64,000 nt of DNA from Magallana gigas (taxonomy: Eukaryota), in NCBI RefSeq assembly GCF_963853765.1, contig NC_088861.1, positions 16,120,001 to 16,184,000 of the forward strand, given 5' to 3'. The notes under the pieces are model-generated. The model was not told the origin of the DNA. It saw only the letters and a list, made by a program, of their open reading frames with translations, and ran no database searches. Position 1 is the stretch's first letter. The number at the start of each line of letters is the position of its first letter. Positions 3,732 to 29,055 of the stretch are shown here, piece after piece. The translations under genes and the position numbers were made by a program.

Positions 3732-6700
3732 CTATCTTAATCCCAAAAATTTTCGAATTCTCCTTCGTAGTCCAAATTTTTGCTTCTCTTTCTTTGAGGG
3801 AGTCTGGAAAAGAAAAAGGACCAAGTCATGAAACATGTATCAATTAACAAAAATCCTAATGGAATTGGAGAGGAAAAAACCCATCACCACCACCACCAAC
3901 AACAACAACCAAATTTATGCTATCTGTTTTAATGTAAATACCTCCATTTTGTCCTCTTCCTCGTCTTCATTTTCATCATCAACAATAGCCTTGGCACCAT
4001 CTAGGGATTCTGGGGGTGGTGAAGGTTCAGCTAATGCAATTGGATTAGATGAATGTACGTCTAAATAACTTGGACCCTGTGAATTAGGCAAAATATTTCA
4101 TATTAATGAATACTTTCCAGGTCTTTTCAATGTACACAAAGAAACAGAGTAAAACAAATACATGTTGAAATAAAGAAGCACATAATTCTTATCCCTCTTT
4201 TTCATATATATATAGATGTATACATTTCAATTGTATTTCATTTGGTGTCCAAATTAAAGTACAATTTTGGGACAATTTTCAAGGCAGACTGAATGAAAAA
4301 AGGAAATATGAAAGGGGAACATATATAGCAGGAACAATAACTCTACATAAAGAACTTATTATTTGGAACCAATAAGTACCTGGAGTGGAAGGTCGTCGCT
4401 TGATTTAAATGTGCTGATGTTGAACAGGAACAGCTTTCTCGGTACGAACTCCTCGTACGCCTCCTCCTCCAATAGTTTCAACTTTTTCCTTTCAGAGCTA
4501 GTTTGCTATAAAAAATAAAATCGAAAATTGTCTTTCATATTCCATGAATAGAATTTCCTTTATGATAGCGTATGTGGATTGGTCTGTAGTGTATAATTTG
4601 CTATAATATTAGTTATGCTGCATGGCCATGCATTTTCATATCATACATGTATTCTTACTAGTAGCTCGGCAAACACTAACTGCATTCTTTTCATCATCTT
4701 TTGTGTTTGTGTTTCCCGTTGAGCGTGAATTGTCTAGGGAAAAGGAACAATAAAAATAAAGATGCAACTGTGTTTGACTTTATGTGTATATTGCTATAAT
4801 CTGATATATATAATTATGTACATTAGCTTACCATAAGTTCTGCACAAACTTCACGCATTTTCTCCTTGATCTGCATAGTCCTTTGCTGAGCATGAAAAGT
4901 CTGAAGAAAGAAAGATTAAATGAAAATTACGACCGAACAACTGATAATATGAAAACATATACATGCAACGTATAAACTATTTGATTCAGTACCGTTGACT
5001 TTACTCGTACATTTATTTAAATGCACTCACCATTAGCTCTGCAAAAACTCTAGTCATGAGTTTCTTGGACGTCTTTATCTTTTGCTGAGAATGAAACATC
5101 TATTGGAAAGAGTAACGAAATTAACACTTAAAAATGTTTTAAAAGCATACATCATATTTTGATTGGAAGCATTTAAATCATAATTGATACTTGATTAAAA
5201 ATTTTGACTACATACATATGTATTTTATGAAATATAAGTACGCTTACCATTATCTCTGTTAAAACTGTACGCATTTGCTCCTTGGTCTTTTCAGCCTTTC
5301 GTTGTTCATGAAATGTCTGTTTAGAAATTAAAATAAAACATTATTAACTGGTTTCATATATGTATTGAGGCATTACACATAGGCGTCGGAACCGGGGAGG
5401 CTGGGGGGGGGGGGGGGCGGGGCTAAGCCCCCCCCCCCCACTTTTTTTGCAAAGTTAGGCCTAACCATCAGGGACATAGGATCATAGAGGGTTCAGCCCC
5501 CCTCCCCCCCCCACTTTTTCTCGGAGCAAAGATAGTTGTTCCTTAATTTACCTTGAAAGATTGAGAAGTTGGAATTATAAGCATAGTAGCCCCCCCCCCC
5601 CCCCACGGATTAGGAATTTCATGATTTTGGTGATTTGGGGGGGGGGGGATTGGTAGGTAAGATTTTTTTGGAAGTATAGGTACCCCCCCCCCCCCCCCCA
5701 CGGATTAGGATTTCCATGGTTTTGGAAATTAGTTTTTTTCCTCAATATCTCTGAGGATTAATCTAGCCCCCCCCCCCCTTTCAATTTGCTTCCGACGCCA
5801 GTGTTATAAAAACACCGTTTTAGCATTGTTTGATTGATTTATTGATTAAATGTAATATAGAAATGATATGTCAACTATTTTATATTTAACTGCAGTCTTT
5901 GCCTACCCTTAGCTCTGCAAAAACTTCACGCATTTGTCTTCTGTTAATTATCATTTTCTGTTCATCATGGAATGTCTGTAAAAATTGAAATCAATTTGTC
6001 TAAATACACGTGTGTGTATGTTCATTTCTTATAATCCCAATCTTGATTTTATTAATATTTTGTGTGTACAATAACTTACCATAAGCTCTTGAAAAACCTC
6101 ATGCATTTTTTCTTTGTTTTTCTTTATGTTCTGTTGAACGTGAAATGTCTGTAAAATCGAAATAAAATCAAGACTCTTTAAGATTATATCATACTTTATT
6201 AATATATCTATTAACAAATGAATTGAATTTTAAAATTTACAACAAATATGAATAGTATACCATAAGCTCTTCGAAAACTCCGATCATTTGTGCTTTGATT
6301 TTTTTGGTGTGCGACTCGGATTGATACTTCTGAAAAATTTATATAAATATGACAACAATGCTTTATACCTGCAGATTATGATAGTTGAAAATATTTAAAA
6401 TAGTGTAAAAGTTCTTACCAATAGTTCCTCCATTTCAACCACTCTCCTTTCTTTATTCTTCAGCAATTTCACTTGCATTGGTTGGTCCTGAAAATATGCA
6501 ATATGAAGCTAGATTATTAATTTTGTTTATAATTTATTTCATTCCTTCAGGGATCAATAGTAATAAAATTTGTTCAAAATTTGCACGAAACAGTATGATT
6601 AATCAAGATGAAACAATGTACATCTAAATAATATGAATAAACATGAAGTTTTAATTCCATTTTTAATAATTAAAAATACAATTCCACGTACTTGCACGAA

Positions 6701-7428
6701 TAGATCTTAAACGATTGTTATAGTTGTGCTATTAATAGTTGTTAACTCATAAAGATGTGTAATACCATGGGGGCTTTCCTTTGGAGAGGCAATCTAGCGA
6801 ATCTCGCGACCCAAGATGGCATGGATGCCTGATAAATAAAATTAAATACATTTGTCATTTTTTCATTCATTAATCTGCACGTTCAAAATTCTACATGGCA
6901 TTAATTAAGATTTAAGAGTTAGATATCTCAAAGCGTTCTTTATAATAACACAGTGTTAATATGAATGTTTCTGAAAATGAAATGTTTACCAATAAATCCC
7001 TCTGGACCTGCCCTCTGTTTCTCTTTTCGATTTGAGTTTGATTCTGCAGAAATATAAAAATTGAACTTACTAGTATCCATAAGTAAAACCATTACAGGAC
7101 CTTAAAATACGAGACGAATATGTTGTCATGGTGTAAATTTTGTATTTACTGCCACCCGGTAAATTCAAAATTTACAACATGACAATGTCACGCAATACGT
7201 TGAGAGACAAATACCAAATCACTGTTAGCGGGATGCATGCCTTTGTTCAGAGATATTAAAAAATTAAAACTTCGATTATCAAGGTGAAACTTAAAATTAG
7301 AAAACAATTCATCAATCGCTTAATGTATCGGATTGGTAAAAGCGTAATTTAATTTAGATCTTAACCACGTATACTTTATCTGGAGATATTTACAGTAAAA
7401 TAATCATACTTACATTCTTCTTCTCCAT
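3732..7428 (-). CDS. Copy A of an unrecognised 14-exon helical-repeat gene (340 aa)
   Basis: Exons in transcript order: 7428-7414, 7043-6990, 6828-6766, 6487-6419, 6329-6261, 6148-6080, 5975-5907, 5316-5248, 5099-5031, 4900-4832, 4733-4659, 4505-4380, 4076-3942, 3803-3732. All GT-AG, all lengths multiples of 3, no internal stop. MEKKN-NQTQIEKRNRGQVQRDLL-ASMPSWVARFARLPLQRKAPM-DQPMQVKLLKNKERRVVEMEELL-KYQSESHTKKIKAQMIGVFEELM-TFHVQQNIKKNKEKMHEVFQELM-TFHDEQKMIINRRQMREVFAELR-TFHEQRKAEKTKEQMRTVLTEIM-MFHSQQKIKTSKKLMTRVFAELM-TFHAQQRTMQIKEKMREVCAELM-TIHAQRETQTQKMMKRMQLVFAELL-QTSSERKKLKLLEEEAYEEFVPRKLFLFNISTFKSSDDLPLQ-GPSYLDVHSSNPIALAEPSPPPESLDGAKAIVDDENEDEEEDKME-TPSKKEKQKFGLRRRIRKFLGLR*. Confidence 0.85.
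5376..5803. mobile_element. 428-bp non-autonomous DNA transposon (MITE) with 3-bp TSD in intron 7 of copy A
   Basis: TIR-like ends CACATAGGCGTCGGAA ... TTCCGACGCCAGTG; TTA duplicated at 5373-5375 and 5804-5806; copies B and C show the empty site GAGGCATTATAAAAACAC. Confidence 0.9.
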
Positions 7429-7510: not shown

Positions 7511-7967
7511 AAAACGACTCTCTCTCTCTTCCATAGGTATGGGGCATAACGTAACACCGTACTCGTATATAACATTTGTCGCAGGTCCCTAAAATCAGCT
7601 TCAATATATAGCGGTGCTGCGGTTTTAATACATGTTCAATGCATTACTTAAGAAATATTAAGAAAAAAATTTCAATTACATTGTAAAAAGCCAAATCTAG
7701 CGCAGTTGCATAATATGTTACTTTGTCAACTTAATCGTCTGTAAATTGGAAACTGAATACAGATTTTGTGATTTTAATTTCAAAAATATTCAAAATTTCA
7801 ATTTCAATACAATAATGACATGATGTTCTTTTAGGTAAAATGTGAAAAAGAGCCACTGCGAATAATAAACAGTGTGTACTAAATCAGTTTCGAAATATAG
7901 CCCGCCATGCATCGCGATAGCCCAACTTTGAAAACACGTCGTCAAAATTGTGTAAAAGCGACTGTAT

Positions 7968-8631
7968 TTTGTGCAGGACAGTGTGTCGTATAAATTTGTG
8001 TTAGCGCGACTGTGCGTTGTGCAGAGTTGTGTTATAGCAAACTTGTGTTGTGTATGGCTTTGTTAAGGCTATAACGTGTTTTGAAGACTTATGTTTGCGC
8101 TATCGTGTGTTGTGCAGAGTTAAACTAGCGCAATCGTGTGCTGTGTAGGGTTTTGTTAGCATGACGGCCTGTCGTACAAAGTTGTGACAGCATGTTGTGC
8201 AGAGTTGTAACGCGACCATGTGTTGTGCAGAGTTGTGTTAGCGTCACCGCGTGTTGTGTATAGAGTTGTATTAGCGCGAAAGTGTGTTGTGCAGAGTTGT
8301 GTTATAGCGAACATGTGTTATACATGGTTGTGTTAACGCTATCACGCGTTTTGAAGATTTGTCTTAGCGCAACCGCGTGTGTTGTATACAGAGTAGTGGT
8401 AGCGCTATCGTGTGTTGTGCAGAGTTGTGTAAGCGCGACCATAAGTTGTGCAGAGTATATTGTTAGTGCGACAGTGTTTTTGTGCAGAGTTGTATTAGCG
8501 CAAATATGTGTTGTGCATGTAAAGAGTTGTGTTAGTGGGACCATGTGTTGTATGTAAAGAGTTGTGTTAGCGCGATCGCGTGTTGTGCAGAGTTGTGTTA
8601 GCACGACCATGTATTGTCCAGAGTTGTGTTG
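7968..8631. repeat. ~31-bp satellite array, consensus TGTGTTGTGCAGAGTTGTGTTAGCGCGACCA
   Basis: Directly visible degenerate tandem units between copies A and B. Confidence 0.9.
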
Positions 8632-8807: not shown

Positions 8808-11800
8808 CTATTTCAATCCTAGAAACTTTCTAATTCTTCTTCTCCATCCATTCTTTTTCTTCTCCAAATTATTTGATGGAATCTAAAGAACAAGAAAGAA
8901 TTCAGCCATGAATATACGTATTAATAAAGACTTCACAGAAAAAAAAAAATCGCCAGATGATAATACATATATATGAGAACAGTTCTAAAATAACTACGAT
9001 ATACATGTACCTCCATTTTCTCTTCGTCGTCGCCTTCGTTTTCATCATCAACAACGTAGCAGGCACCATCTAAGGACTCTGGGGGTAGTTCAAGTTCAGC
9101 TGATGCCACAAGGCTTGATAGGTCTGGATACCTCGGACCCTGCGAAGGCAGAATGTTTAATTTTTAGTACGTGTATATACTTTACAGGTTATGCAACTTC
9201 CATGTACATGTACATAAAGAAACACAGTAAAACCGATTAACTGTGAAAATGAAAAATTAAGCACTTTATCATATATAATAAGATGCATGCATTTAAAATA
9301 TATTTCAATCAATTTGTGACCAAATTAAAGTGAAGTTTTGAGACCATTTCCAAAGCAGATCCGCGGACTGAATGAAAAAGAAATTTGAAAAGGAGACATA
9401 TAGCAGGAACAATAACTCTGTATAAAGAACTTCTTATTTGACGTCATGCAGTTTGTAACTTTTTACCTGGAGTAGATGGTCATCATCGGTTTGCTTGAAA
9501 CTGATGATGTTGAACAGGAACAGCTTTCTCGGTACGAACTCCTCCTCCTCCAATAATTTCAACTTTTTCCTTTCAGTGTTAATTTGCTATAAAAAATAAA
9601 ATCGAAAATTGTATGTCATATTCCATGAATAAAATTTCCTTTATGATAGCGTATGTGAATTGGTCTTTATAGTATATAATTTGCTATAATATTAATTATG
9701 CTGCATGGCCATGCATTTTCATATCATACATGTATTCTTACTAGTAGCTCGTCAAACACTAACTGCATTCTTTTCATCATCTTTTCTGTTTGTGCTTCAC
9801 GTTGAGCGTGAATCGTCTAGGGAAAAGAAATAATAAATATAAACATGCAACTGTACATGTATTTGAATTTATGTGTATATTGTTATAATCAGATATATAT
9901 GTACATTAGCTTACCATAAGTTCTGCACAAACTTGACGCATTTTCTCTTTGATCTGCTTAGTCCTTTGCTGAGCATGATAAGTCTGGAAAAAAAATATTA
10001 AATGAAAATTGCGACTTAACAACTTATAACATGTAAACATACTTGTATTTCAAAGATGCAACGTATAACAAGTATTGTTGTAAACTATTTGAATCAGTTC
10101 TGTTGACTATACTCGTACATTTATTTAAATGCACTCACCATTAGCTCTGCAAAAACTCTAGTCATGAGTTTCTTGGACGTCCTCATCTTTTGCTGAGAAT
10201 GAAACATCTATTGGAAAAAGTTACGAAATTAACACTTAAAAATGCTTTAAAAGCATACATCATATGTTGATTGAAAGCATTTAAATCATAATTGATACTT
10301 GATTAAAATTTTTGACTACATACATATGTATTTCATGAAATATAAGTACGCTTACCATTATCTCTGTTAAAACTGTACGCATTTGCTCCTTGGTCTTTTC
10401 AGCCTTTCGTTGTTCTTGAAATGTCTGTTTAGAAATTAAAATAAATCATTAACTGGTTTCATATGTATTGAGGCATTATAAAAACACTGTTTTAGCATTG
10501 ATTGAATGATTGATTGATGAGATGTTATACAGAAACGATATGTCAATTATTTTTTGTTTTACTACAGTCTTTGCTAACCCTTAGCTCTGTAAAAACTTCA
10601 CGCATTAGTACTTTGTTCTTATGTATTTTCTGCTTATCATGAAATGTCTGTAAATTTTGAAATCCAATGTTTAAAATACACGTGCGTGTATTTTCATTTC
10701 TTATAATTCCAATCTTGATTTTCTTAATATTTTGTGTGTACAATAACTTACCATAAGCTCTTGAAGAACTTCATCCATTCTCTTTTTGTTTTTCTGGATG
10801 CATTGTTGAACGTGACATGTCTGTAAAATCGAAATAAAATCAAGACTTTTTAAGATTAGATCATACTTTATTAATATATCTATTAACAAATGAATTGAAT
10901 TTTAAAATTTACAACAAATATGGATAATATACCATAAGCTCTTCAAAAACTCGGGTCATTTGTGCTTTGATTTTTTTGGTCTGCGTCTCGGATTGATACT
11001 TCTGAAAAATTTATATAAATATGACAACAATGCTTTATACCTGCAGATTATGATAGTTTAAAATATTTATAATAGTGTAAAAGTTCTTACCAATAGTTCC
11101 TCCATTTCAACCACTCTCCTTCCTTTATTCTTCAGCAATTTCACTTGCATTGGTTGGTCCTGAAAATATGCAATATGAAGCTATATAGATTATTAATTTT
11201 GTCCATAATTTATTTCATTCCTTCAGAGATCAATAGTAAAAAAATGTGTTCAAAAATTGCACGAAACAGTATGATTAATTGAGATGAAACAATGTACATC
11301 TAAATAATATGAATAAACATGAAGTTTTAATTCCATGTTTAATAATTTGTCAATTATTTTTAAAAATTCAATTCCACGTACTTGCACAAATAGATCTAAA
11401 ACAATTGTTTTAGTTGTGCTAATAATAGTTAACTCATAAAGATGTGTAATACCATGGGGGCTTTCCTTTGGAGAGGGAATTTAGTGAACCTGGCGACCCA
11501 AGATGGCGTGGATAGCTGATAAATGAAATTGAATAAATTTTTCATTTTTTCATTCATTAATCTGCACATTCAAAATTCTACATGGCATTAATTAAGATTT
11601 AAGAGTTGGTGTTAGATATCTCAAAGCATTCTTTATAATAACACAGTGTTAATATGACTGTTTCTGAAAATGAAATGTTTACCAATAAATCCCTCTGGAC
11701 CTGCCCTCTGTTTCTCCTTTCGATTTGAGTTTGATTCTGCAGAAATAAAAAAATTGAACTTACTAGTATCCATAAGTATTACCATTACAGGAACTTTAAA

Positions 11801-12120
11801 TACGAGACGAATATGTTGTTATGTTGCATTGTAAACTTTGTATTTACTGCCATCCGGTAAATTCAAAATTTACAACATGACAATGTCACGCAATACGTTG
11901 AGAGACAAATACCAAATCACTGTTAGCTGGATGCATGCATTTGTTCAGAGAAAAAAAATTAAAACTTAGATTATCAAGGTGAAACTTAAAATTAGAAAAC
12001 AATTCATCAATCGCTTAATGTATCGGATTGGTAAAAGCGTAATTTAATTTAGACTTTAACCAAGTACACTTTATCTGGAGTTATTTACAGTAAAATAATC
12101 ATACTTACATTCTTCTCCAT
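8808..12120 (-). CDS. Copy B of the 14-exon helical-repeat gene (336 aa)
   Basis: Exons: 12120-12109, 11736-11683, 11515-11453, 11159-11091, 11001-10933, 10820-10752, 10647-10579, 10424-10356, 10207-10139, 9983-9915, 9816-9742, 9586-9467, 9139-9011, 8882-8808. All GT-AG, phase 0, open; ends IPSNNLEKKKNGWRRRIRKFLGLK*. Confidence 0.85.
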
Positions 12121-12200: not shown

Positions 12201-12494
12201 TTACATTGTAAAAAGGCAAACATCTAGCACAGTTTCATAATATGTTACTTTGTCAACTTAATCGTCTGTAAATTGGAAACTGAATACAGATTTTGTAATT
12301 TTAATTTCAAAAATATTCAAAATTTAAATTTCAATACGATAATGACATGATGTTCTTTCAGGTAAAATGTGAAAAACAGCCATTGCAAATAATAAACAGT
12401 GTGTACTAAATCAGTTTCGACATATAGCCCGCCATGCATTGCGGTAGCCCAACTTTGAAAACAGGCCGTCAAAATTGTGTAAAAGCGACTGTAT

Positions 12495-13147
12495 TTTGTG
12501 CAGTGTTGTGTTAGCAGGACAGTGTGTCGTATAAATTTGTGTTAGCGCGACTGTGCGTTGTGCAGAGTTGTGTAATAGCAAACATGTGTTGTGTATGGTT
12601 TTGTTAAGGCTATTACGTGTTTTGAAGACTTGTGTTTGCGCTATCGTGTGTTGTGCAGAGTTGAAGTAGCGCAATCGTGTGCTGTGCAGGGTTTTGTTAG
12701 CATGACGGCCTGTCGTAAAGAGTTGTGACGCGACCATGTGTTGTGCAGAGTTGTGTTAGCGTCACTGCGTGTTGTGTAGAGTTGTATTAGCGCGAAAGTG
12801 TGTTGTGCAGAGTTGTGTTATAGCGAACATGTGTTATACATGGTTGTGTTAACGCTATCACGCATTTTGAAGATTTGTCTTAGCGCAACCGCGTGTGTTG
12901 TATACAGAGTTGTGGTAGCGCTATCGTGTGTTGTGCAGAGTTGTGTAAGCGCGACCATGAGTTGTGCAGAGTATATTGTTAGTGCGACAGTGTTTTTGTG
13001 CAGAGTTGTATTAGCGCAAATATGTGTTGTGCATGTAAAGAGTTGTGTTAGTGGGACCATGTGTTGTATGTAAAGAGTTGTGTTAGCGCGATCGCGTGTT
13101 GTGCAGAGTTGTGTTAGCACGACCATGTATTGTCCAGAGTTGTGTTG
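12495..13147. repeat. ~31-bp satellite array, near-identical duplicate of 7968-8631 (offset 4516 bp)
   Basis: Same unit order. The ORF-track entries 8282-8557 and 12798-13073 differ at only two residues. Confidence 0.9.
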
Positions 13148-13323: not shown

Positions 13324-16300
13324 CTATTTCAATCCTAGAAACTTTCTAATTCTTCTTCTCCATCCATTCTTTTTCTTCTCCAAATTATTTGATGGAATCT
13401 AAAGAACAAGAAAGAATTCAGCCATGAATATACGTATTAATAAAGACTTCACAGAAAAAAAATTCGCCAGATGATAATACATATATATGAGAACAGTTCT
13501 AAAATAACTACATATACATGTACCTCCATTTTCTCTTCGTCGTCGCCTTCGTTTTCATCATCAACAACGTAGCAGGCACCATCTAAGGACTCTGGGGGTA
13601 GTTCAAGCTCTGCTGATGCCACAAGGCTTGATAGGTCTGGAAAACTCGGACCCTGCGAAGGTAGAATGTTTAATTTTTAGTACGGGTATATACTTTACAG
13701 GTTATGCAACTTCCATGTACATGTACATAAAGAAACACAGTAAAACGATTAAATGAAGAATAAGGCACAAAACTCTTTTCCCTCTTTGTCATATATGATA
13801 AGATGCATGCATTTAAAATATATTTCAATCAAATTGTGACCAAATTATAGTACAGTTTTGAGACAATTTTCAAAGCAGGAATTTGAAAGGGAAACATATA
13901 GCAGGAACAATAACTCTGCATAAAGAACTTTTTATTTGACGTCATGCAGTTTGTAACTTTTTACCTGGAGTAGATGGTCATCATCAGTTTGCTTGAAACT
14001 GATGATGTTGAACAGGAACAGCTTTCTCGGTACGAACTCCTCGTACGCCTCCTCCTCCAATAGTTTCAACTTTTTCCTTTCAGTGTTAGTTTGCTATAAA
14101 AAATAAAATCGAAAATTGTATGTCATATTCCATGAATAAAATTTCCTTTATGATAGCGTGTGTGAATTGGTCTATATAGTATATAATTTGCTATAATATT
14201 AATTATGCTGCATTGTCATGCATTTTCATATCATACATGTATTCTTACCAGTAGCTCGTCAAACACTAACTGCATCCTTTTCATCATCTTTTGTGTTTGT
14301 GTTTCCTGTTGAGCGTGAATTGTCTAGGGAAAAGAAATAATAAATATAAAAATGCAACTGTATTTGATTTTATGTGTATATTGTTATAATCAGATATATA
14401 TGTACATTAGCTTACCATAAGTTCTGCACAAACTTCACTCATTTTCTCTTTGATCTGCATAGTCCTTTGCTGAGCATGGAAAGTCTGAAGAAAGAAAGAT
14501 TAAATGAAAATTACGACTTAACAACTGATAATATGAAAACATATACTTGTATTTCAAAACATGCAACGTATAAACAATTTGATTCAGTACCGTTGACTTT
14601 ACTCGTACATTTATTTAAATGCACTCACCATTAGCTCTGCAAAAACTCTAGCCATGAGTTTCTTCGACGTCCTTATCTTTTGCTGAGAATGAAACATCTA
14701 TTGGAAAAAGTAATGATACACTTAAAAATGTTTTAAAAGCAAACATCATATGTTGATTGGAAGCATTTAGTAAAGTATAGTTTATTAGCTAAAAACCACA
14801 TGGTTTATAGGCATTGTATAAATACATGTAAATAAATAATCAATGTGAACAAATTTTTTGGCAGTACACATGCAGACACATCTGCCATTATGAGATATTA
14901 CCACAAATGTACAATGTAAATAATTACATAAAAAAAGAAAAGAAAAATGTACATATATGTATCTTATAATATTTATATTATCACATTAGGAGGATAATAT
15001 ACATATTAACTAAAGCAAATTATTTCTATACTCTGTGGCTATAAATCATAATTGATTCTTGATCAAAAATTTTGAAAATACATGTATTTCATAAAATATA
15101 AATAAGCTTACCATTATCTCTGTTAAAACTGTACGCATTTGCTCCTTAATCTTTTCAGCCTTTCGTTGTTCTTGAAATGTCTGTTTAGAAATTAAAATAA
15201 AACATTAACTGGTTTCATATGTATTGAGGCATTATAAAAACACTGTTTTAGCATTGATTGATTGATTGATTAGCTGTAATATAGAAACTATATGTCATTT
15301 TTTTTTTACTGTTGTCTTTGCTTACCCTTAACTCTGCAAAAAGTTCACGCATTTGTCTTCTGTGAATTTTTATTTTCTGCTTATCATGGAATGTCTGTAA
15401 AAATTGAAATAAATTGTTTACATACACGTGCGTGTATTTCATATCTTATAATCCCAATCTTGATTTTATTAATATTTTGTGTGTACAATAACTTACCATA
15501 AGCTCTTGAAGAACTTCATCCATTCTCCCTTTGTTTTTCTGGATGTTTTGTTGAACGTGAAATGTCTGTTAAATCGAAATAAAATCAAGACTCTTTAAGA
15601 TTATATCATACTTTATTAATTTATCTATTAACAAATAAATTGAATTTTAAAATTTACAACAAATATGAATGATATACCATAAGCTCTTCAAAAACTCCGA
15701 TCATTTGTACTTTTATTTTTTTGGTGTGCGTCTCGGATTGATAATTCTGAAAAATTTATATAAATATGACAACAATGCTTTATACCTGCAGATTATGATA
15801 GTTTAAAATATTTACAATAGTGAAAAAGTGCTTACCAATAGTTCCTCCATTTCAACCACTCTCCTTTCTTTATTCTTCAGCAATTTCACTTGCATTGGTT
15901 GGTCCTGAAAATATGCAATATGAAGCTAGATTATTAATTTTGTTTATAATTTATTTCATTCCTTCAGAGATCAATAGTAATAAAATTTGTTCAAAATTTG
16001 CACGAAACAGTATGATTAATTAAAATGAAACAATGTACATCTAAATAATATGAATAAACATGAAGTTTTAATTCCATGTTTAATAATTTGTCAATTATTT
16101 TTAAAAATTCAATTCCACTTACTTGCACAAATAGATCTAAAACAATTGTTTTAGTTGTGCTAATAATAGTTAACTCATAAAGATGTGTAATACCATGGGG
16201 GCTTTCCTTTGGAGAGGCAATTTAGCGAATTTCGCGACCCAAGATGGCATGGATACCTGATAAATGAAATTAAAGAATTTTGCATTTTTTCATTCATTAA

Positions 16301-16874
16301 TCTGCACATTCAAAATTCTACATGGCATTAATTAAAATTTAAGAGTTGGTGTTAGATATCTCAAAGCATTCTTTATAATAACACAGTGTTAATATGAATG
16401 TTTCTGAAAATGAAATGTTTACCAATAAATCCCTCTGGACCTGCCCTGGAGTTCGTCCTCTGTTTCTCCTTTCGATTCGAGTTTGATTCTGCAGAAATAA
16501 AAAAATGAAAACTTACTAGTATCCATAAGTATTACCATTACAGGAACTTAGAATACGAGACGAATATGTTGTCATGTTGTAAATTTTGTATTTACTGCCA
16601 TCCGGTAAATTCAAAATTTACAACATGACAATGTCACGCAATACGTTGAAAGACAAATACCAAATCACTGTTAGCGGGATGCATGCATTTGTTCAGAGAT
16701 ATTAAAAAATTAAAACTTCGATTATCAAGGTGAAACTTAAAATTAGAAAGCAATTCATCAATCGCTTAATGTATCGGATTGGTAAAAGGGTAATTTAATT
16801 CAGACTTTAACCGAGTACACTTTATTTGGAGTTATTTACAGTAAAATAATCATACTTACATTCTTCTTCTCCAT
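13324..16874 (-). CDS. Copy C of the 14-exon helical-repeat gene (344 aa)
   Basis: Exons: 16874-16860, 16488-16423, 16256-16194, 15904-15836, 15746-15678, 15565-15497, 15394-15326, 15180-15112, 14697-14629, 14484-14416, 14323-14249, 14093-13965, 13652-13524, 13398-13324. All GT-AG, phase 0, open. Confidence 0.85.
14768..15041. mobile_element. 274-bp AT-rich insertion specific to copy C intron 8
   Basis: Copies A and B read GCATTTAAATCATAATTG uninterrupted. The insert has imperfect inverted ends (TAG...AGTATAG / CTATACT...CTA). Confidence 0.6.
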
Positions 16875-17062
16875 CCTTCCTTTCGGTTGTAGCAACAACA
16901 ATGATTATGACGTCATAGATAACGATCGTCATTGTGACGTATGTATGACGTAATAAAAAACTCTCTCTCTCTTGCCCATAGGTATGTGGCATACCATAAT
17001 ACCGTACTCGTATATAACATTTGTCGCAGGTCCCTAAAATCAGCTTCAATATATAGCGGTGC

Positions 17063-17745
17063 TATATGTGTTAGTGTGTTAGTGCGACCGTTTATTGTGC
17101 GGAGTTGTGTTATAGCAAACATGTGTTGTGCATAGTTGTGTTAAGGCTATTACGTGTTTTGAAGACTTGTGTTTGCGCTATTGTGTGTTGTGCGGAGTTA
17201 AACTAGCGCAATCGTGTGCTGTGCAGGGTTTTGTTAGCATGACGACCTGTCGTAAAGAGTTGTGACAGCATGTTGTGCAGAGTTGTAGCGCGACCATGAA
17301 TTGTGCAGAGTTGTGTTAGCGTCACCGCGTGTTGTGCGGAGTTGTGTTAGTGCGAAAGTGTGTTGTGCAGAGTTGTATATAGTATAGCGAACATGTGTTA
17401 TACATGGTTGTGTTAGCGCTATCACGCGTTTTGAAGATTTGTCTAAGCGCGACCGTGTGTTGTGCAGAGTTGTGGTAGCGCTATCGTGTGTTGTGGCGAG
17501 TTGTGGTAGCGCAACCATGAGTTGTACAGAGTATTGTTAGCGCAACCGTGTGTTGTGCAGATGTGTGTAAGCGCGACAGGATTTTGTGCAGAGTTGCCAG
17601 TATTAGCGCGAACATATGTTGTCCAGAGTTGTGTTAGCGCGACCATGTATTGTCCAGAGTTGTGTTAGCGCGACCATGTATTGTCCAGAGTTGTGTTAGC
17701 GCGACGAGTGTTGTGCAGGGTTGTGTTATCGTGATCATGTGTTGG
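17063..17745. repeat. Third ~31-bp satellite array, upstream of copy C
   Basis: Same consensus, with consecutive identical units near 17640-17700. Confidence 0.9.
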
Positions 17746-18534: not shown

Positions 18535-18600
18535 AATTCCCAGCGGGACTCGAACTCATGACTTATAGATTCGTAGAAAAGCCTCTTACCCACTGCACTA
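18535..18600 (-). mobile_element. tRNA-derived SINE-like head within a larger repeat
   Basis: Minus strand TAGTGCAGTGG (A box) ... GAGTTCGAGTCC (B box); no complete cloverleaf evident. Confidence 0.5.
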
Positions 18601-19955: not shown

Positions 19956-20757
19956 ATGAGACAGCAACCAAAAGCTAGGGCTGTATCGCCCTCGGGGCTG
20001 ATATTTCTCTGTCTCAGTCCGTCGTCAAGGGGGTGTATTGCCCTCAAATTTAAAATAGCTAATTCCCAAATATCTCTGCTTTGAATTAAGACTAGTTGTG
20101 AAATAACGATATACTATCAAATATATAATACAAAGCATCACCTTACACGTCTGAATATTTTTATTAATTGCTGTGAAAAATGATAATTCAAAAATAGCGC
20201 CAAAGAATGATATGTATCTAAGAAAGGGGAGTAAACCAAACGACGGTTGTTTATTTAGAACAATAGCATGCTTTATTTAATATCAATCAACATTTAAATA
20301 ATAGAGGATATAGAGATTAATCTTAGAAAACCAGAGTTTAGATTGTAAAAAGTAATTGGTTCAAGTAATGGACGCGCTTATGAACGTTCTCAAAAGTATG
20401 GATTTTTATGAATGAAATTTAACAGGAAACTTACGAAATCTCAGTGAAAGACGTTACGAAGTTGCGTAGGATGGAAGTAAGTTGAAGTTTCTCTCTCGAT
20501 AATTTTCAATTCTGGAAGATAGTGCTTAATCTCAGACGACAGACTCCCTTCTACTGTATATTTCAAACGATGTTGGTTTGTCAACTAAGTCCGACAATCG
20601 CTCAGTTCTTAACACATAAAAAGGAAAAAAACGAACAAGTTTTGTAAATCCGAAAATTAATCCATAGCTTCTTCGTGATAAATTATATTCCTTATTTGGA
20701 ATTTGAATTTGAATAAAAGTATTTGATTTTAGATATATGATATAAACAACATCACGT

Positions 20758-21694: not shown

Positions 21695-21990
21695 CCAGCC
21701 ACGTAGCATCGGGGGGGGGGGGGGGGGGGGACGGGGGCAGCCCCCCCCCCCCACTTTTTTGCGCCGCAAAGATTTTTCTTAAATTTACATACAAAAAATT
21801 TATTTAACATGGAGTTGCCCCCCCCCTTCTATGGGACCATGTAAAAAAATGAATTAAAAATAAGGAAATAATCAGTGAAATTGAAGTTAAAGAGGTATCT
21901 TACCACCCCCCCCCCCCCACCCCACGGATTAAGATTTTTTGAATGAGTCTGCCCCCCCCCCCACTTTCAAAAACGATGCTACGTGCCTGG
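21695..21990. mobile_element. 296-bp G/C-tract MITE with apparent 3-bp TSD (TAT)
   Basis: TIRs CCAGCCACGTAGCATCG ... CGATGCTACGTGCCTGG; TAT on both sides. Confidence 0.8.
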
Positions 21991-22122
21991 TATCAACAAA
22001 ATTTTGAATGTGATGGAAACGGTAACTTTGACAGACTTTTTAGGTACAATACATTGCCCTAGCTAATTGTGTACGGCTAGTGAAAATAGCATGGAATTTT
22101 TAGCAAATAAATGCAATTTTAC

Positions 22123-22128
<6 letters not shown>

Positions 22129-22204
<76 letters not shown>
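22129..22204. repeat. (CT)n microsatellite
   Basis: Direct inspection. Confidence 0.95.
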
Positions 22205-22207
<3 letters not shown>

Positions 22208-22416
22208 GTACACTATGAATTATTAATACAATTTTGTTTGATCTAAACAAGAATAAAAAGAACTATAACCGAAATTAAAAGTGGTGAAAAAAGTTTAATC
22301 AACGGCATTTGACATCCACTTTAAATTGTGTATTTTAAAAGTTGAGATTAAAAGCAAGCTACAGATGTAGCCGACATGCAATATAGAAATTTGACAACAC
22401 AATTGGTGCTCAATGT

Positions 22417-25400
22417 CTATTTCAATCCAAGAAATCTTAACACTCTTTTCCTCAGTCCACCCTTTTTCGTCTTCTTTGAATGAGTCTAAAAAAGAAAGAA
22501 AGAGTCATGTATAAATGCATTGATGAAAACCTTCATGGATAAATTTTTTTTTTATAAAACGAATTTCCGTAAGATTAATGATTATTGTTATGCGGTAACT
22601 ACCTCCATTTTGTCCACTTCCTCGTCGTCATTTTCATCATCAACAACAGCCTTAGCATCTAGGGATTCTTGGGGTGGTGCAAGTTGGGATGATGCCACGG
22701 GGCTAGATAAGTGTGGAGAACTCGGCTCCTGCGAAGAAGGCAGAATATTTCATATTTTAAAAATACCTTCCATATATGTAATTTACATGTAGTACACAAA
22801 GAAACACAGTTAAACGAATATATAATTGTGAAATGAATAACCTCAAACTCTTTTACATATAGATTTACATTTCAGATGTATTTCAATCAATCAGTTTGTG
22901 ACCAAATTATAGTACAGTGTTGAGACAATTTTCAAAGCAGACTGAATGAAAAAGAAATATGAAGGGGGAGCATAGCAGAAACAAGCAGGAACAATAACTC
23001 TGGATCTAGAACTTCTTATTTGGAACCAGTATGTACCTGGACTAGATGGTCGTCGCTTGATTTAAATGTGCTGATGTTGAACAAGAACAGTTTTCTTGGT
23101 ACAAACTCCTCCTCCTCCAAAAGTTTTAACTTTTTCTTTTCGGAGTTAGTTTGCTAAAAATCAAATTAAAAAAAAGTGTCATTCACATTTCCATGAATAA
23201 AAATGTATGATAGCACATGTAAATTAATTTAAATTATACAATTAGCTAATATATGCTGTCTGGCCATATATTTACATATATACATGTACATCTATATATA
23301 TACTTACCAATAGCTCGGCAAACACAACATCATTATCTCCTTGCTCTTCTGTGTTTTCCGTTGAGCGTGAAACGTCTAGAGAAAAATTCCAATAAATATA
23401 GACTCTTGATTGTTAATATGTGTTGTGTATTCTTGAAATTAAATTCATGCATATGCAACGTATACTATAGTATGTTTAATCATTATTTACATCGCTATGT
23501 ACATTTATTTACCATTAGTTCTGCAAAAATGTCACGCATTCTCTCACTGATCTGTTTAGTTCTTTGCAGAGCATGAAAAGTCTGAAAAAAAATTAATGAA
23601 ATAAAAACTAGGACTTTATAAAATAATTTATGAAAAAATTGTTTTCTCAGCAGGTCCCGGGGTCATAAAAGTTAGACGAGCTCAATTTTGATCTCAGTCT
23701 CTTTTTAGACGGTGGCTATTTATAGCCACTGTCTATTGCTACGGTCCTGACCGGAAGGGTATTTCTCACGGGGACCCTAGCGGATAACGAACGATAACTC
23801 TGTTAGGTACATGTATGCAGTGTTTTATCTACGTGTCGATTTCAGTATGAGAACTCATTTTAATCTTATCAGATATTTTAAGCATTATAGCTGCTAATTA
23901 TTTTGTACATACATTTAAATAATGTATGAAATTGGGTTTTATTTTAAATGAGCCGTTACCCTATCTGCTTACGCGGTATTAATAATATTAATTAAGGCTC
24001 AAACTGCCAGTTTTGACGTTTAACTCTGTATCAGGACTGCATATAAACTATATCACTGCGATAATTGGTCAAGAGATCTCACAATAATTGCTTCTTGTTT
24101 TTTATGATATAAATAATTGTCAGAAACACACTATTTAAACTGGTTTGCCATTTCATATTTCAGCAATTATGCTTCATCGATAAATTCAGCCATTTTCAAC
24201 GCATTAGTTTTAGTTGAGCAGTATATTTTTTGTTGTTGAAGCTTATTCCAAAGAATTCACAACAGATACTCACAATGAATATTACATAAATTACATTTTA
24301 TTGAACTTCAACCGATCAATGGCACAGTTTCTTCTACAAGTGTGCACTAGTGTGTTTTCAAACACACAAAAACTTTAAATTAACGATACAAATGTGTTAA
24401 ATTTTCGACTGACCTGTGATTTACAATGTACCTTATTTCGTACCTCACTCAGTCTGTAGAAACATAAATTTTATTACAGGCACCTCAATATTCATCAGAC
24501 AATATTTACTGCAGATGTTGACGCTTTACTTGCTGCTGACTTTCTCTCAAACACGCTAATCGACGTCGGATTGTAAAATTCACGTGCAAATCGAGTCCCC
24601 ATTTTAAATGTTTATAAACTACATTTTACGATGTTTCAAAGATTTTTAGTTCAGATTTTTTTTTACATATGCTGTAAAACGTCTTGTGGATTTCACGGCG
24701 TGTCAGCTCGTCTATCTCTAATTTGCAGCAAATGCTAGCTTTTTTGTGAGAAAAAACATGCGATATTCCATATACATTTATGGTACATAATGAACGGTAA
24801 TGTAAGAGAGCATCTTTTCTTTGGTTTGGGGGCATTTTTTCACTAACAGATAACATTATTTACATATGTACGTAAACATCGCCCCGTTTGTTCTCAAATG
24901 ATTCTTAATTCGCGAGTACAACTCTATTATGAACTTTCTTCGACATTTGTTTCCAAGTGTTAGCATCATTTTGTCAACATGCATTTACAAATAGGCGGGC
25001 CTATATAAATGCGCCAGTTTGTTGCGACTCACAATTGAAATACACACCGGTTAGAAAGTGTCATCACTTAACACAATGCTTGAAGGCAAAAAAATGTGCT
25101 TCATAGATGACTGTAGAATTCTGCTGAGCTACAGAAATATAGCTTTCCGAAAATATTGCCGGGATTTGCGAACCCTAGATCTATTGTTTAGTACATGCAA
25201 AGAATAAAATCAAAGAAGATAGGCGAATAAGGCGTGTAAAATGCCCATATGAGGAATGATTAGATACGGCAAAATTAAAATATCATTAAATCTGATACTT
25301 TTTTAAAAAATAATTAAAAACAATGTATATTTAACGTAACATCGGATTGTAATCTTTAAATATTTTAAATATACTTGCAATATATTGATTTAAACTGGCG

Positions 25401-28400
25401 TATGCGTGTCAAAACCTCCTAATCGTGTAATTTTTATAACTTCAATTCATTTTCTTTCATAGAGTGGGTCTGAGCTCAATATTTTTTTTTTTACAGTCTA
25501 AATGTGGTTTAATGGAATTTAATAAACCGATTGGACTCAACAAAAATGTGGAGAGATGACCCACTACAGTTCAAAAATGTCATTTTGTAGCTCAACAATT
25601 GAAAGTTTTAGAAATATAATACAAGTCCGAAAATTCGTGGTCATAGTCTCATATAGCATTTAAACAACGCACTTTGTTGTGAATGAAATGGCTCACCATG
25701 GTTAGAGCACCATCCATTAGGAAACTTTATAGAACTTGGGTTCGATACCACCAAAACTTAAAAATTTATTATTTTTTTCTTATCTTTTTGAAATATTTCA
25801 AACTGAATATAGTTAGAAATTACCATTTTGTAAACTTGCATAATAACATATCAAATATATTTAATTGAAAAAATGCTAAATTTGAAATTGTATTTTACAA
25901 CTAAACCAAAATGGCAGTTGCGCCATCTTATCCCCCCATCTTCTTTATATACACAGCTGTACGGTCAGAAAAACGTGCGTTCAGCTTGAATTTTGTTTGT
26001 TTGGTGTTTTTAAAAACTTATTTTGTATAATTAATCAATATTTGTTGTAAGTTTACTAGAAAAGTTTAATGTAGCAAGTAATTTATGCGTGTTAAAGTGT
26101 ACTGAGAAGCGATAAAATATACATGTGACTTTCCCGAATTCATTCAAATAGTTTGAATAAATCTATAGCTAAATACAATAGAACAAATGTTTAAAACGTT
26201 GATTAATGAAACTGCCGCGACCGAATGTTGTATGATATTTTTTAAAATTTTCATTCACTTTCGTTGTGAGCAAATGGAAATAATCCCCTAAAGTCGAAGA
26301 TAAAATATTGATTTACTCTTCTGTTTCATGATGACGTGCATTCCAAAAGCAATGCCAGTTTTATCAAACAGGTTCTTGTAAACCCATTCCGTTTTTTTTT
26401 ACACCTTAATGTATTAACTGACTATGAGGGAAAAAAAAGCAAATGTGATGATCCACAAGACTGCAACTTTTTCCCCGTGAAGAAAATGAGGGAAAATGCT
26501 GTCGAGAGGGACAATTAATATACTATATGTATGCCCAAATAGTTAGTAAAAATAAGTATTTTATCATACCAAAGCTTTATTTGTTCTCGTTACGTTGAGA
26601 AATCTACAATATATTTAAAGCACAATAGTCCAATCCACACTTTTCAAAAGTTGTTCCCATTTGCGGGGCCAACCCAAAGGTCAAAAAGGAATAAACCAAA
26701 ATTCCCCTTCTTCAAACAATCAAATATTTGGGCGTACTGTGATGAAATCGCTTTGGATTTGATTTATTCATTCAATATGTGGTGGCAACCATTCAAACGG
26801 GGTTTTAATGTCAACTGATATAGATACAAACATATTGATACAAAATATATATACAAACTTCTATACGACAAAGACTACTGTGATAAATCTTTGGGCCTTT
26901 CCCAAAAGATGACGACCAAGAGACACAGCATTTGTAAAGTGTAGAGTGAGATCACAGCTACGATTTCCACAGAATTATCCATGTAGGAAACTCACGACTA
27001 GTTGTGCGAGTAAGCGTTAAGTATTAGTACATGAATGCGATACTGGTCGCGGTTTTCGACAAAAAAATAATTATCATACATCACTCATTGTTACATGTAA
27101 TATGCCACTTTCAAACGACGCCACCGTCTAACAGTACTTTCAGTACTTTGATTTACAAAAGAAATATATGGTGGAAAAGTGAGACTGAAATCAAAAGTGA
27201 TCGAGCTCGTCTAACTTTTATGGCCCCGCGGGGCCAGGTCTATAAAACCATTTATTGACCTCATCAAAAGGCTATAATTATGTATTATTAATATTCGTCC
27301 CTTAAAATATATATGTATTTGCTGAATTTGAAGATTTTCAAAATATATAAATAGTAATATATCATTTAATATTTTAATATATACCATTAGCTCTTCAAAC
27401 ACTCCAATCATCTGTTGTTTGTACTTTTTAACCTGCTGCTGAGCATGAAATGTCTGGAAAATAAACAGATTTGATTACATGGTTTTTTAGGGAATCATAT
27501 ACCGGTAATAGTGTAAATAAATGAATATACATCATTGTAAAAGATCTTACCAATAATTCCTTCATAACAATCCCTCGCCTTTCTTTTTCTTTTTGAAATT
27601 CCATAAATTTTCGTTCCTTTTCACTGTGAACTTTTTTTTGTTTGTCCTGAAAGTATGAAATATGGTTTTTTTTTTTGAAGAGACTCGTATATTTTTTTTT
27701 ATTTATGAAACAAAATATAATTTGAGATTAACACCGTGTCATTTACCTTGCTTTCATCTTGTGATATAAAGTTTTAATTTTTGTCATTTTTTTTTACGTA
27801 CCAGTAGCTCCTTTAAAACTTGACGCATGCGTTCTCTGTATACATCTCTCTTATCTCCATGGTTGTCATTCTGTTGATCCCAAGAATAAAAGGGTGATTT
27901 CAATGTGAAATTTCAAAACACGCATGAATTCAATTAAATGCATATGATTTTTGAAACTTTTGAAAATCTTAGTACTTTGATTTCTTCTCCCCGGTCTACG
28001 GCGACTAGGCTTGCTCGAGAATCTTGTTGAGTCTGAAATTGATGTGCACAATTTTTATATAATTATAAATAAATATAGATTTATAATAATTTGACAATTG
28101 TAACGGTCATAGGAAGATATATATATTTGTTTTATTTGGATGTGTTTATTATAAAATAACTCATTCAGATACGTACCATGGGAGCTTTGCTTTGTAGTGG
28201 CGATATGCCGTCTCTCTTGGCCTAAGATGGCATGAAGACCTAAAAAAACATTTTTTTTTTCATTGAATAAATCATCTCTGGACGTTTTACTTGAAATAAA
28301 GATTTAAGATTTGAAGATAATTATCAAGTTTCACACGCATACAGTTCTGTGTTTGTATATGCTATATACATGTACATATATGTATATTGAGTAGATTTAA

Positions 28401-29055
28401 TTTTGAAACGTTCATAGTTAATTAAAAGAAACTTACGTTCAGATTAGAATGTCTCTCATGAATGGTCTTTAGATTTCCTGACTTGTTCACATAAGCCACT
28501 AAGTCCTTCTGCAGAAATATTCAAACATAGATTGTGGTTTAATCTGATTTTTGGGGGTGGGGTGGGGTGTTAAACATCTCACTATGCACTTGTGATAATG
28601 CAGTTGTAAAATAATAGCAAGATAGAAATAATCCGTTGTCTGTGGTATACTTAAAGTTAGCGTCATTTTCTATGATATGTATGATTTTTATAATTATGTA
28701 CGTTCGATTTTTAATATGAAGTGTTTACCAATAAATCCCTCTGGACCTGCTCAACAGTCCGTCTTCTCGTTCTCATCTCGCTCTGAGTTTGATTCTGAAG
28801 AAAAGAAAAAAAATCGACTTAAATAAGGAACTAACCAAAAAGATCTAAAGACGAATACCAATGTGGGAAATCCGTCGGAATGCACGGAGATATTAAAATA
28901 TTGAAACTTTGATAATTCAGTTAAAATTTGAAATAACACAACAACCAAAAGCTTATATCGGAGTGATAAAAGAGCAATTCATTCTAAATTATACAAAAGT
29001 GACATTCATTTGTAGTTAATTACGGTAAAATAATCATACTTACATTCTTCTCCAT
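22417..29055 (-). pseudogene. Copy D: diverged, probably disabled paralogue of the helical-repeat gene
   Basis: Exons: 29055-29044 (MEKN), 28794-28729, 28239-28177 (TGG>TAG at 28222-28224), possible 28032-27976, 27870-27802, 27646-27551, 27453-27385, [3.6-kb insertion], 23581-23513, 23375-23308 (68 nt, 1-bp deletion), 23153-23037, 22728-22603, 22485-22417 (THSKKTKKGGLRKRVLRFLGLK*). Confidence 0.75.
23654..27234. mobile_element. ~3.6-kb TIR element, PIF/Harbinger-like by TSD, no intact transposase ORF
   Basis: TIRs GTCCCGGGGTCATAAAAGTTAGACGAGCTC ... GAGCTCGTCTAACTTTTATGGCCCCGCGGGGC; CAG at 23651-23653 and 27235-27237 (a CWG-type 3-bp TSD is known for some Harbingers). Confidence 0.7.

What the first reader, a model, noticed from the sequence alone, without database searches (positions are those of the whole stretch)
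3732..29055. Four-copy tandem family of an unrecognised gene built from one-exon-one-repeat modules
No exon exceeds 135 nt, so the six-frame track shows only fragments. Manual splicing gives three intact, collinear 14-exon genes (340, 336, 344 aa) and a fourth damaged paralogue. Architecture: short N-terminus; eight ~23-aa repeats; invariant EEFVPRKLFLFNI; acidic Pro/Asp/Glu linker; basic C-terminal helix (RRRIRKFLGL[KR]*). No signal peptide or TM segment. I do not recognise the family, so it may be a lineage-specific system under birth-and-death evolution.
Basis: partly seen in the sequence, partly recalled or inferred. Interest (0 to 1): 0.92.

Follow-up and report, generated by a model that had tools for sequence, protein, structure and literature searches.

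The report
Oyster-only tandem family of rod-like proteins
Four neighbouring copies of a gene found only in Pacific and Portuguese oysters encode a long single-helix protein built from one 23-residue module per tiny exon; the genes are real and expressed, and RefSeq already lists them, but their function is unknown.

Summary
On the minus strand lie three intact 14-exon genes: A (7428-3732, 340 aa), B (12120-8808, 336 aa) and C (16874-13324, 344 aa). A fourth, 13-exon paralogue D (29055-22417) carries a premature TAG and a 1-nt deletion. All introns are GT-AG and phase 0, and no coding exon exceeds 135 nt.

The window is Magallana gigas OY970753.1. Gene C equals a RefSeq protein letter for letter, and RNA-derived contigs match the exon junctions. 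RefSeq isoforms skip exactly one 69-nt repeat exon.

Homologues were found only in M. gigas and C. angulata. There is no Pfam or PDB sequence match, and no significant fold match.

AlphaFold2 predicts one uninterrupted helix of about 130-200 residues. After it come the invariant EEFVPRKLFLFNI motif, an acidic disordered linker and a basic C-terminal helix. The 23-residue period breaks the heptad register at every module, so the helix is not a classical coiled coil, a single alpha-helix (SAH) domain or an IQ array.

dN/dS is about 0.35 at dS of about 1, which shows purifying selection. Mosaic identity and a polymorphic pseudogene show gene conversion with birth-and-death turnover.

My best reading is a lineage-restricted rod or scaffold protein whose length is set by exon number. 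Its cellular role is inferred, not shown. The scan has not noted this family on other DNA.

The parts
3732..7428 (-). Gene A, 14 coding exons, 340 aa
   Evidence: Exons 7428-7414, 7043-6990, 6828-6766, 6487-6419, 6329-6261, 6148-6080, 5975-5907, 5316-5248, 5099-5031, 4900-4832, 4733-4659, 4505-4380, 4076-3942, 3803-3732. All GT-AG and phase 0.
8808..12120 (-). Gene B, 14 coding exons, 336 aa
   Evidence: Exons 12120-12109, 11736-11683, 11515-11453, 11159-11091, 11001-10933, 10820-10752, 10647-10579, 10424-10356, 10207-10139, 9983-9915, 9816-9742, 9586-9467, 9139-9011, 8882-8808. RefSeq isoform P0005 equals B with exon 7 skipped.
13324..16874 (-). Gene C, 14 coding exons, 344 aa; identical to RefSeq P0006
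   Evidence: Exons 16874-16860, 16488-16423, 16256-16194, 15904-15836, 15746-15678, 15565-15497, 15394-15326, 15180-15112, 14697-14629, 14484-14416, 14323-14249, 14093-13965, 13652-13524, 13398-13324. P0007 equals C with exon 7 skipped. RNA contig L003 matches most junctions.
22417..29055 (-). Gene D, a divergent 13-exon paralogue (about 45% aa identity to A-C), broken in this haplotype
   Evidence: Exons 29055-29044, 28794-28729, 28508-28437, 28239-28177, 28032-27976, 27870-27802, 27646-27551, 27453-27385, 23581-23513, 23375-23308, 23153-23037, 22728-22603, 22485-22417, all AG/GT. RNA contigs L002 and L005 match the exons. RefSeq splits this gene into P0019 and P0020.
28222..28224 (-). Premature stop (TAG where intact alleles have TGG, Trp) in D exon 4
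   Evidence: transcript L002 has TGG at this position.
23308..23375 (-). D exon 10, 68 nt instead of 69 (1-nt deletion causing a frameshift)
   Evidence: Alignment to L002; RefSeq P0019 ends in the shifted frame.
14249..15904 (-). Repeat block of gene C: eight exons R1-R8 (7 x 69 nt, 1 x 75 nt), one 23-25-aa module each
   Evidence: The consensus module is TFH.QQK.KK.KEQMREVFAELM, with M15 and E21 invariant. The equivalent blocks are A 6487-4659 and B 11159-9742.
13965..14093 (-). Exon 12 of gene C, carrying the invariant EEFVPRKLFLFNI motif
   Evidence: Alignment A2. The motif is invariant across both subfamilies in A3. The equivalents are A 4505-4380, B 9586-9467 and D 23153-23037.
13324..13398 (-). 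Last exon of gene C: a polybasic amphipathic C-terminal helix ending ...RRRIRKFLGLK*
   Evidence: AF2 predicts a helix at residues 326-340. The equivalents are A 3803-3732, B 8882-8808 and D 22485-22417.
16875..16932 (-). Conserved 5' leader with a 23-24-codon upstream ORF that overlaps the main ATG out of frame and stops at the exon 1/2 junction
   Evidence: The upstream ATGs lie at 7486, 12178, 16932 and 29113. The uORF is present in RNA contig L002. The leader is the stretch best conserved between D and A-C, 84% over 169 nt.
7944..8630 (.). 31-nt minisatellite in the spacer upstream of gene A; part of the duplicated unit
12454..13146 (.). 31-nt minisatellite upstream of gene B
17022..17744 (.). 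31-nt minisatellite upstream of gene C
20435..20512 (-). Alternative upstream non-coding first exon, joined to exon 2 of a C-type transcript
   Evidence: RNA contig L003, nt 1-68.

Best explanation
This is a tandem cluster of a protein family found so far only in Magallana oysters (M. gigas and C. angulata). The family is under purifying selection but evolves fast. Each protein is intracellular, with no signal peptide or TM segment. Its core is one uninterrupted alpha-helix of about 20-29 nm, assembled from 23-residue modules, each encoded by its own symmetrical phase-0 69-nt exon.

Shown: the gene structure, the transcription and splicing, the exon-skipped isoforms, the restricted taxonomic range within the databases searched, the predicted long helix, and the absence of a heptad register.

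Inferred: the protein acts as an elongated rod or scaffold. Its length, and its number of Met-rich hydrophobic patches flanked by basic residues, changes in steps of about 3.45 nm through exon duplication, exon loss and exon skipping. Each 23-residue step turns the hydrophobic patch by about 140 degrees, so the patches cannot form one continuous seam. They are more likely separate docking or self-packing sites. The invariant EEFVPRKLFLFNI motif, the acidic disordered linker and the polybasic amphipathic C-terminal helix would be the partner-binding or anchoring end, attaching to membrane, nucleic acid or a Ca-sensor protein.

The cluster itself evolves by unequal crossing-over and gene conversion, with copies gained and lost.
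For: Gene models: all GT-AG and phase 0, with gene C identical to RefSeq P0006.
RNA contigs: L002-L005 are collinear with the exons.
Exon skipping: RefSeq X2 isoforms equal the gene minus exon 7, and L003 lacks R2.
Structure: AF2 gives a single helix at residues 52-247, with 10-residue block mean pLDDT of 76-91 over about residues 81-230 and lower at both ends. The D-type protein gives a helix at 97-229 with pLDDT up to 95. The rest is disordered except a short C-terminal helix.
Periodicity: hydrophobicity has its main period at about 23 residues and no significant power in the 3.3-3.9 residue band. The best heptad register changes about once per module.
Selection: dN/dS is 0.33-0.40 between subfamilies at dS 0.8-1.1, Fisher p = 2e-11.
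Taxonomic range: only M. gigas and C. angulata hits in one exhaustive and three word-indexed searches.
Cluster dynamics: identity among A-C is mosaic. A=B at 95-100% across the upstream spacer and minisatellite, and B=C at 99% at the 3' end where A is about 70%.
Against: No experiment or tissue information bears on function. AF2 pTM is only 0.24 with a 13-sequence alignment, and long helices are a common default for such sequences. A monomeric 29-nm helix with 35% hydrophobic residues is not stable alone, so the true state (folded back, oligomeric or partner-bound) is unknown. Only four RNA contigs carry family members, each seen once, so expression may be low or narrow. dN/dS among the young copies A-C is 0.3-0.75, and their exon divergence is no lower than their intron divergence.
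Confidence: 0.5

Rival explanations
1. An ordinary homo-oligomeric coiled-coil structural protein, as the automatic RefSeq name 'coiled-coil domain-containing protein 30-like' suggests. Two or more chains would zip along the whole helix to form a fibre or tether.
For: AF2 predicts a long uninterrupted helix. Within each module the hydrophobic residues follow a 3-4 spacing over about three heptads. The only Foldseek rows are filament-type helical proteins, but at E >= 5.
Against: There is no significant power in the 3.3-3.9 residue band (no peak at 3.5), and the best register shifts at nearly every module because 23 = 3x7+2. No Pfam family reaches threshold for any of the five members scanned.
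Confidence: 0.2
2. An IQ-like array: each 23-residue module on the continuous helix binds one calmodulin, calmodulin-like or centrin light chain, as in myosin lever arms, ASPM or Sfi1.
For: The spacing of 23 residues on a single helix equals the IQ spacing in myosins (established knowledge). Each module has a basic half followed by a hydrophobic patch. Nine of the 100 nearest Atlas clusters to P0006 carry PF00612 IQ, at a low score of 0.55.
Against: There are no matches to the strict IQ consensus, and a loose version matches at chance level. Pfam IQ is not reported even at E <= 10. The Atlas lead is not reproduced with the D-type protein.
Confidence: 0.08
3. A young, transcribed gene family with little or no selected protein function, drifting and decaying. 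Copy D would be the first visible casualty.
For: The family is taxonomically restricted. D is pseudogenised here. RNA contigs are few. dN/dS is up to 0.75 among A-C, and their exons are as divergent as their introns.
Against: dN/dS is about 0.35 at dS of about 1 between subfamilies, p = 2e-11. All 39 introns of A-C keep GT-AG and phase 0. A 13-residue motif and the repeat core positions are invariant at 45% overall identity. D is intact in other individuals and in C. angulata.
Confidence: 0.1
4. A metal-buffering helix: the recurring M-x-x-H element across each module boundary (...ELM|TFH...) and the 6-7% Met content would bind Cu(I) or Zn in a metal-accumulating oyster.
For: Met is 6.2-6.8% of residues. 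M15 is invariant, and M23 and H3 are nearly so.
Against: This rests on a pattern recalled from bacterial Cu proteins only. There is almost no Cys, no match to a metal-binding family, and the Met residues sit in the hydrophobic face, as expected for packing.
Confidence: 0.04
5. An assembly artefact: A-C would be collapsed or expanded copies of one gene.
For: None beyond the high similarity of the copies.
Against: The copies differ by 5-9% in substitutions, have copy-specific indels and show mosaic identity. Distinct RefSeq genes exist on the same chromosome-level record. Distinct paralogues exist in older assemblies and in C. angulata.
Confidence: 0.01

Closest known systems
IQ-motif lever arms (myosin V, ASPM) and Sfi1 centrin-binding repeats
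   Same: One continuous alpha-helix carries short repeats at a fixed spacing of about 23 residues. Successive hydrophobic patches spiral around the helix rather than forming one seam.
   Different: There is no IQ consensus and no Pfam IQ match. No bound light chain is known. Here each repeat is its own exon.
CCDC30 (the automatic RefSeq name of gene C isoform X1)
   Same: A Lys/Glu/Gln-rich, predicted long-helical protein.
   Different: No Pfam family of any kind reaches threshold. Only one of more than ten family entries carries the name, and the others are 'uncharacterized'. The name looks like a compositional by-product.
Repeat proteins built by duplicating symmetrical exons (collagen 54-nt exons, titin PEVK, nebulin); established knowledge
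   Same: One exon equals one structural repeat. Introns are phase-symmetrical, so exons can be duplicated, lost or skipped in frame. Isoforms differ by whole repeats.
   Different: The repeat sequence and fold are unrelated. The exons are 69 nt and encode a 23-residue helical module. The family is confined to one oyster genus in the databases searched.
Canonical coiled coils and single alpha-helix (SAH) domains
   Same: A predicted uninterrupted helix of 130-200 residues.
   Different: There is no continuous heptad register. The charged fraction is only 0.33, and i/i+4 opposite-charge pairs are no more frequent than in shuffled sequence.

Membership tests
IQ calmodulin-binding motif (PF00612) | Consensus [FILV]Qxxx[RK]Gxxx[RK]xx[FILVWY], or a Pfam IQ match | tested here: not met
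   No strict matches in A, B, C or P0016. The loose pattern matches 1-2 times, against 0.2-0.3 expected. No IQ row in hmmscan at E <= 10.
IQ calmodulin-binding motif (PF00612) | Binding of calmodulin or a light chain to each repeat | not testable with these tools
   This needs a complex prediction or a binding assay.
CCDC30 family | A significant match to a CCDC30-family profile | tested here: not met
   No Pfam model reaches its cut-off for P0001, P0002, P0006, P0008 or P0016. The best is Rtt106_N at 14-16 bits against a cut-off of 26.3.
Canonical (heptad) coiled coil | A continuous 3.5-residue hydrophobic periodicity and a stable a/d register over the helix | tested here: not met
   Fourier power is highest at about 23 residues. 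The best peak in the 3.3-3.9 band, at 3.79 residues, is reached by 30 of 300 shuffles. The best register changes about every 20 residues.
Single alpha-helix (SAH) domain | A very high E/K/R content with enriched i/i+4 salt bridges | tested here: not met
   Charged fraction 0.33-0.38 and hydrophobic fraction 0.32-0.35. There are 6 i/i+4 pairs against 10 expected.
Taxonomically restricted (orphan) gene family | No detectable homologue outside a narrow clade | tested here: met
   An exhaustive profile search with exon 12 over 1.84 billion representatives gave 4 hits: one is a C. angulata RefSeq protein, and the other three are unnamed Logan contigs of unrecorded species. A full-length sequence search, a profile search and a D-type search named only M. 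gigas and C. angulata. Limits: the full-length searches use a word prefilter, and un-annotated oyster genomes could not be searched.
Tandem cluster under birth-and-death evolution with gene conversion | Paralogues with mosaic identity, polymorphic pseudogenes and chimeric copies | tested here: met
   Sliding-window identity switches between A=B, A=C and B=C. D is broken here but intact elsewhere. P0008 and P0010 are chimeric, with repeat exons closest to A or C and a D-like C-terminus.

The most novel reading that the evidence does not exclude
The family is an exon-quantised molecular ruler or docking array unique to Magallana oysters. The cell would set the number of 3.45-nm partner-binding modules by skipping symmetrical 69-nt exons. 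The same property would let a 'broken' copy such as D still yield an in-frame product by skipping its two damaged exons. Translation would be gated by a conserved upstream ORF whose stop codon exists only after exon 1 is spliced to exon 2.
Probability: 0.15. Interest if true: 0.65.

Novelty: new variant of a known kind. Interest (0 to 1): 0.4.

Why it matters
The cluster is a clean, compact case of how a new protein family is built and remodelled. One helical module sits on each symmetrical exon. Exon gain and loss separate the paralogues: A-C have R3-R6, which D lacks. Isoforms differ by whole modules, and gene conversion and pseudogenisation occur inside one 25-kb cluster. The 23-residue period rules out a simple coiled coil, so the structure of these proteins is a real open question. 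For oyster biology, it adds an uncharacterised, genus-restricted, copy-number-variable locus of the type often tied to reproduction or immunity, though nothing here shows either. It is not a new kind of genetic system, and the genes are already in RefSeq.

Tried and rejected
- I first modelled phase-1 introns from a misread exon-1 donor. This was corrected to phase 0.
- My first 13-exon model (319, 315 and 323 aa) lacked the 21-aa exon 3. That exon was recovered from RefSeq P0001 and confirmed in the DNA.
- An Atlas search with exon 12 alone gave nothing usable.
- Pfam on five family members gave only sub-threshold noise.
- A PDB profile search gave 0 hits.
- Foldseek against the PDB gave nothing at E <= 0.001.
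- The IQ lead from the Atlas was not supported by regex, Pfam or the D-type query.
- Literature searches for the LOC and UniProt ids, the SRA run ids and 'CCDC30 + gigas' found no papers.
- Introns between repeat exons show no mutual similarity, so the internal exon duplications are old.
- The 3.8-kb intron of D has no long ORF, and no inverted repeat was found in 17700-29300, so no transposon was identified.
- No further family exons lie elsewhere in the window.
- Candidate short motifs in the linker (a TRAF6-type PxExxD at P[PQ]ESLD, an NLS-like KKK..RRR.RK) were noted by eye only and given no weight.
Full report
**Where the window comes from**

The locus fetched for RefSeq protein P0006 (L001) comes from Magallana gigas assembly GCA_963853765.1, record OY970753.1, at about 16.12 Mb. 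It is 100% identical to window 3324-26874 in reverse orientation. The whole feature lies on the minus strand.

**Check of the observation**

EEFVPRK/KLFLFNI occurs four times and RRRIRKFLGL three times.
- A direct-repeat scan shows a unit of about 4.5-5 kb present three times, plus a more diverged fourth copy.
- I rebuilt the genes from open exons bounded by AG and GT. After correcting an early misreading of the first donor, every intron is phase 0.
- My first model had 13 exons. The C. angulata RefSeq protein P0001 revealed one more 21-aa exon, which is present with good splice sites in A, B and C.
All sites are GT-AG, and the longest coding exon is 135 nt. Gene C's product is identical to RefSeq P0006.
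- Copy D has 13 exons with intact splice sites. It carries a TAG where intact alleles have Trp (28224-28222) and a 1-nt deletion in exon 10 (23375-23308, 68 nt). RefSeq accordingly splits it into two short proteins.

**Transcription and splicing**

- Four contigs assembled from public sequencing runs (L002-L005, 0.9-1.5 kb) carry intron-less ORFs of this family. They align to the window exon by exon, with breaks at the predicted junctions to within 1-3 nt.
- L002 is a full-length D-type transcript encoding an intact 321-aa protein.
- RefSeq isoforms P0005 and P0007 equal genes B and C with exon 7, one 69-nt repeat exon, skipped.
- L003 lacks repeat exon R2, uses a donor 12 nt downstream at R8, and starts from an alternative upstream exon at 20435-20512.

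**What the protein looks like**

The order along the protein is as follows:

- a short basic N-terminus (exons 1-2);
- a 21-aa exon with a conserved MPSW...PLQ.KAPM pattern;
- eight modules of 23-25 residues with the consensus TFH.QQK.KK.KEQMREVFAELM (M15 and E21 invariant; F2, H3, K12, V18 and L22 nearly so);
- an exon with the invariant EEFVPRKLFLFNI motif;
- an acidic Pro/Asp/Glu exon;
- a polybasic amphipathic end.

AlphaFold2, run with the 13-sequence family alignment, gives one uninterrupted helix at residues 52-247 of gene C's protein. Its 10-residue block mean pLDDT is 76-91 over about residues 81-230 and falls towards both ends. For the D-type protein it gives a helix at 97-229 with pLDDT up to 95. 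Everything else is low-confidence coil, apart from a short C-terminal helix. pTM is 0.24 in both models.

The strongest period in hydrophobicity is about 23 residues. The best peak in the 3.3-3.9 residue band, at 3.79, is matched by 30 of 300 shuffles, and there is no peak at 3.5. The best heptad register changes roughly once per module, as expected from 23 = 3x7+2.

The charged fraction is 0.33, and i/i+4 opposite-charge pairs are not enriched, so this is not a single alpha-helix domain either. The hydrophobic patch of each module (M15 to F2 of the next module) spans the exon junction, which partly agrees with note s1-361786.

**Relatives**

- A profile of exon 12, searched exhaustively against 1.84 billion representative proteins, found four proteins. 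One is a C. angulata RefSeq protein, and the other three are unnamed Logan contigs whose species is not recorded.
- Searches with the full-length B-like protein, the family profile and the D-type protein returned only proteins named as M. gigas or C. angulata, plus unnamed Logan contigs.
- All carry the name 'uncharacterized' except one automatic 'CCDC30-like'.
- Pfam, the PDB by sequence, Foldseek against the PDB and the ESM Atlas give nothing significant.
- A weak Atlas lean towards IQ-motif clusters for P0006 was not reproduced with the D-type protein. It is also contradicted by the absence of the IQ consensus.
- No paper in the library mentions the gene or protein identifiers.

**Selection and cluster dynamics**

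- Between the two subfamilies, dS is 0.8-1.1 and dN/dS is 0.33-0.40 (Fisher p = 2e-11), so the protein has been under purifying selection for a long time.
- Among the young copies A-C, dN/dS is 0.3-0.75, and exon divergence is no lower than intron divergence.
- Sliding-window identity is mosaic. A and B are 95-100% identical across the upstream spacer and minisatellite. B and C are 99% identical over the last exons, where A is only about 70%.
- A chimeric paralogue exists in other individuals. P0010's repeat exons match A or C best, and the C-termini of P0008 and P0010 are D-like.
- D is intact in other M. gigas sequences and in C. angulata.
- By nucleotide similarity, D has the counterparts of R1, R2, R7 and R8 but not of R3-R6, and it has extra N-terminal exons. 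The paralogues therefore differ by whole exons.
- Introns between repeat exons are no longer alignable to one another, so the internal duplications are old.

**Interpretation**

Shown: a real, spliced, selected gene family, restricted to this genus in the databases searched, that encodes a very long predicted helix made of exon-sized modules and sits in a cluster evolving by conversion and by gain and loss of copies.

Inferred: the protein is a rod or scaffold whose length and number of hydrophobic patches change in steps of 23 residues. The conserved C-terminal elements would be its binding or anchoring end. I put this at about 0.5.

The main rival is a plain homo-oligomeric coiled coil (0.2), which the missing heptad register argues against. 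An IQ-like light-chain array (0.08), a drifting gene without function (0.1) and a Met/His metal binder (0.04) are weaker.

**Limits**

No tissue or stage information could be obtained. Genomes of other oysters could not be searched at the DNA level. The tools do not predict complexes.

**Verdict**

However, the genes are already annotated as uncharacterised. What is new is an unstudied orphan family with an unusual non-heptad helical repeat, not a new kind of system. Interest is moderate.

Noticed in passing
window 7486, 12178, 16932, 29113 (upstream ATGs, minus strand): All four paralogues share a 23-24-codon upstream ORF (MTIVIYDVIIIVVATT..KDGEE*). It starts 58 nt before the main ATG, overlaps it out of frame and ends at a TAA that is formed only by splicing exon 1 to exon 2. 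A 3-codon mini-uORF lies at -42. This 5' leader is the best-conserved stretch between D and A-C.
   Followed up: partly
window 7944-8630, 12454-13146, 17022-17744: A GC-rich 31-nt minisatellite (about 14-21 copies, unit TGTTGTGCAGAGTTGTGTTAGCGCGACCGTG) sits about 0.3-1 kb upstream of genes A, B and C. It is part of the duplicated unit, and TRF reports none upstream of D.
   Followed up: no
window 20435-20512 (-): RNA contig L003 begins with 68 nt from here, joined directly to exon 2 of a C-type gene. This is an alternative non-coding first exon 3.6 kb upstream that bypasses the normal start codon.
   Followed up: partly
window 23582-27384 (-): The intron of D between its R2-like and R7-like exons is 3.8 kb, whereas A-C carry four repeat exons with short introns in that position. 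No ORF of 80 aa or more lies in it, and no inverted repeat was found in 17700-29300, so its origin is unexplained.
   Followed up: partly
window 50549-51298 (+): A 249-aa ORF has a Core-2/I-branching enzyme (PF02485, GT14) match at its end (E = 1.8e-12). It is probably the first coding exon of a neighbouring glycosyltransferase gene.
   Followed up: partly
window 41496-42059; 57479-58129; 59613-60148: Other tandem arrays: a 28-nt minisatellite (20 copies) and two satellites with units of 167 and 177 nt (2.5-4 copies).
   Followed up: no
window 28177-28239 and 23308-23375 (-): Both lesions of D lie in exons flanked by phase-0 introns, so skipping either exon would keep the reading frame. Whether such transcripts exist was not tested.
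   Followed up: no
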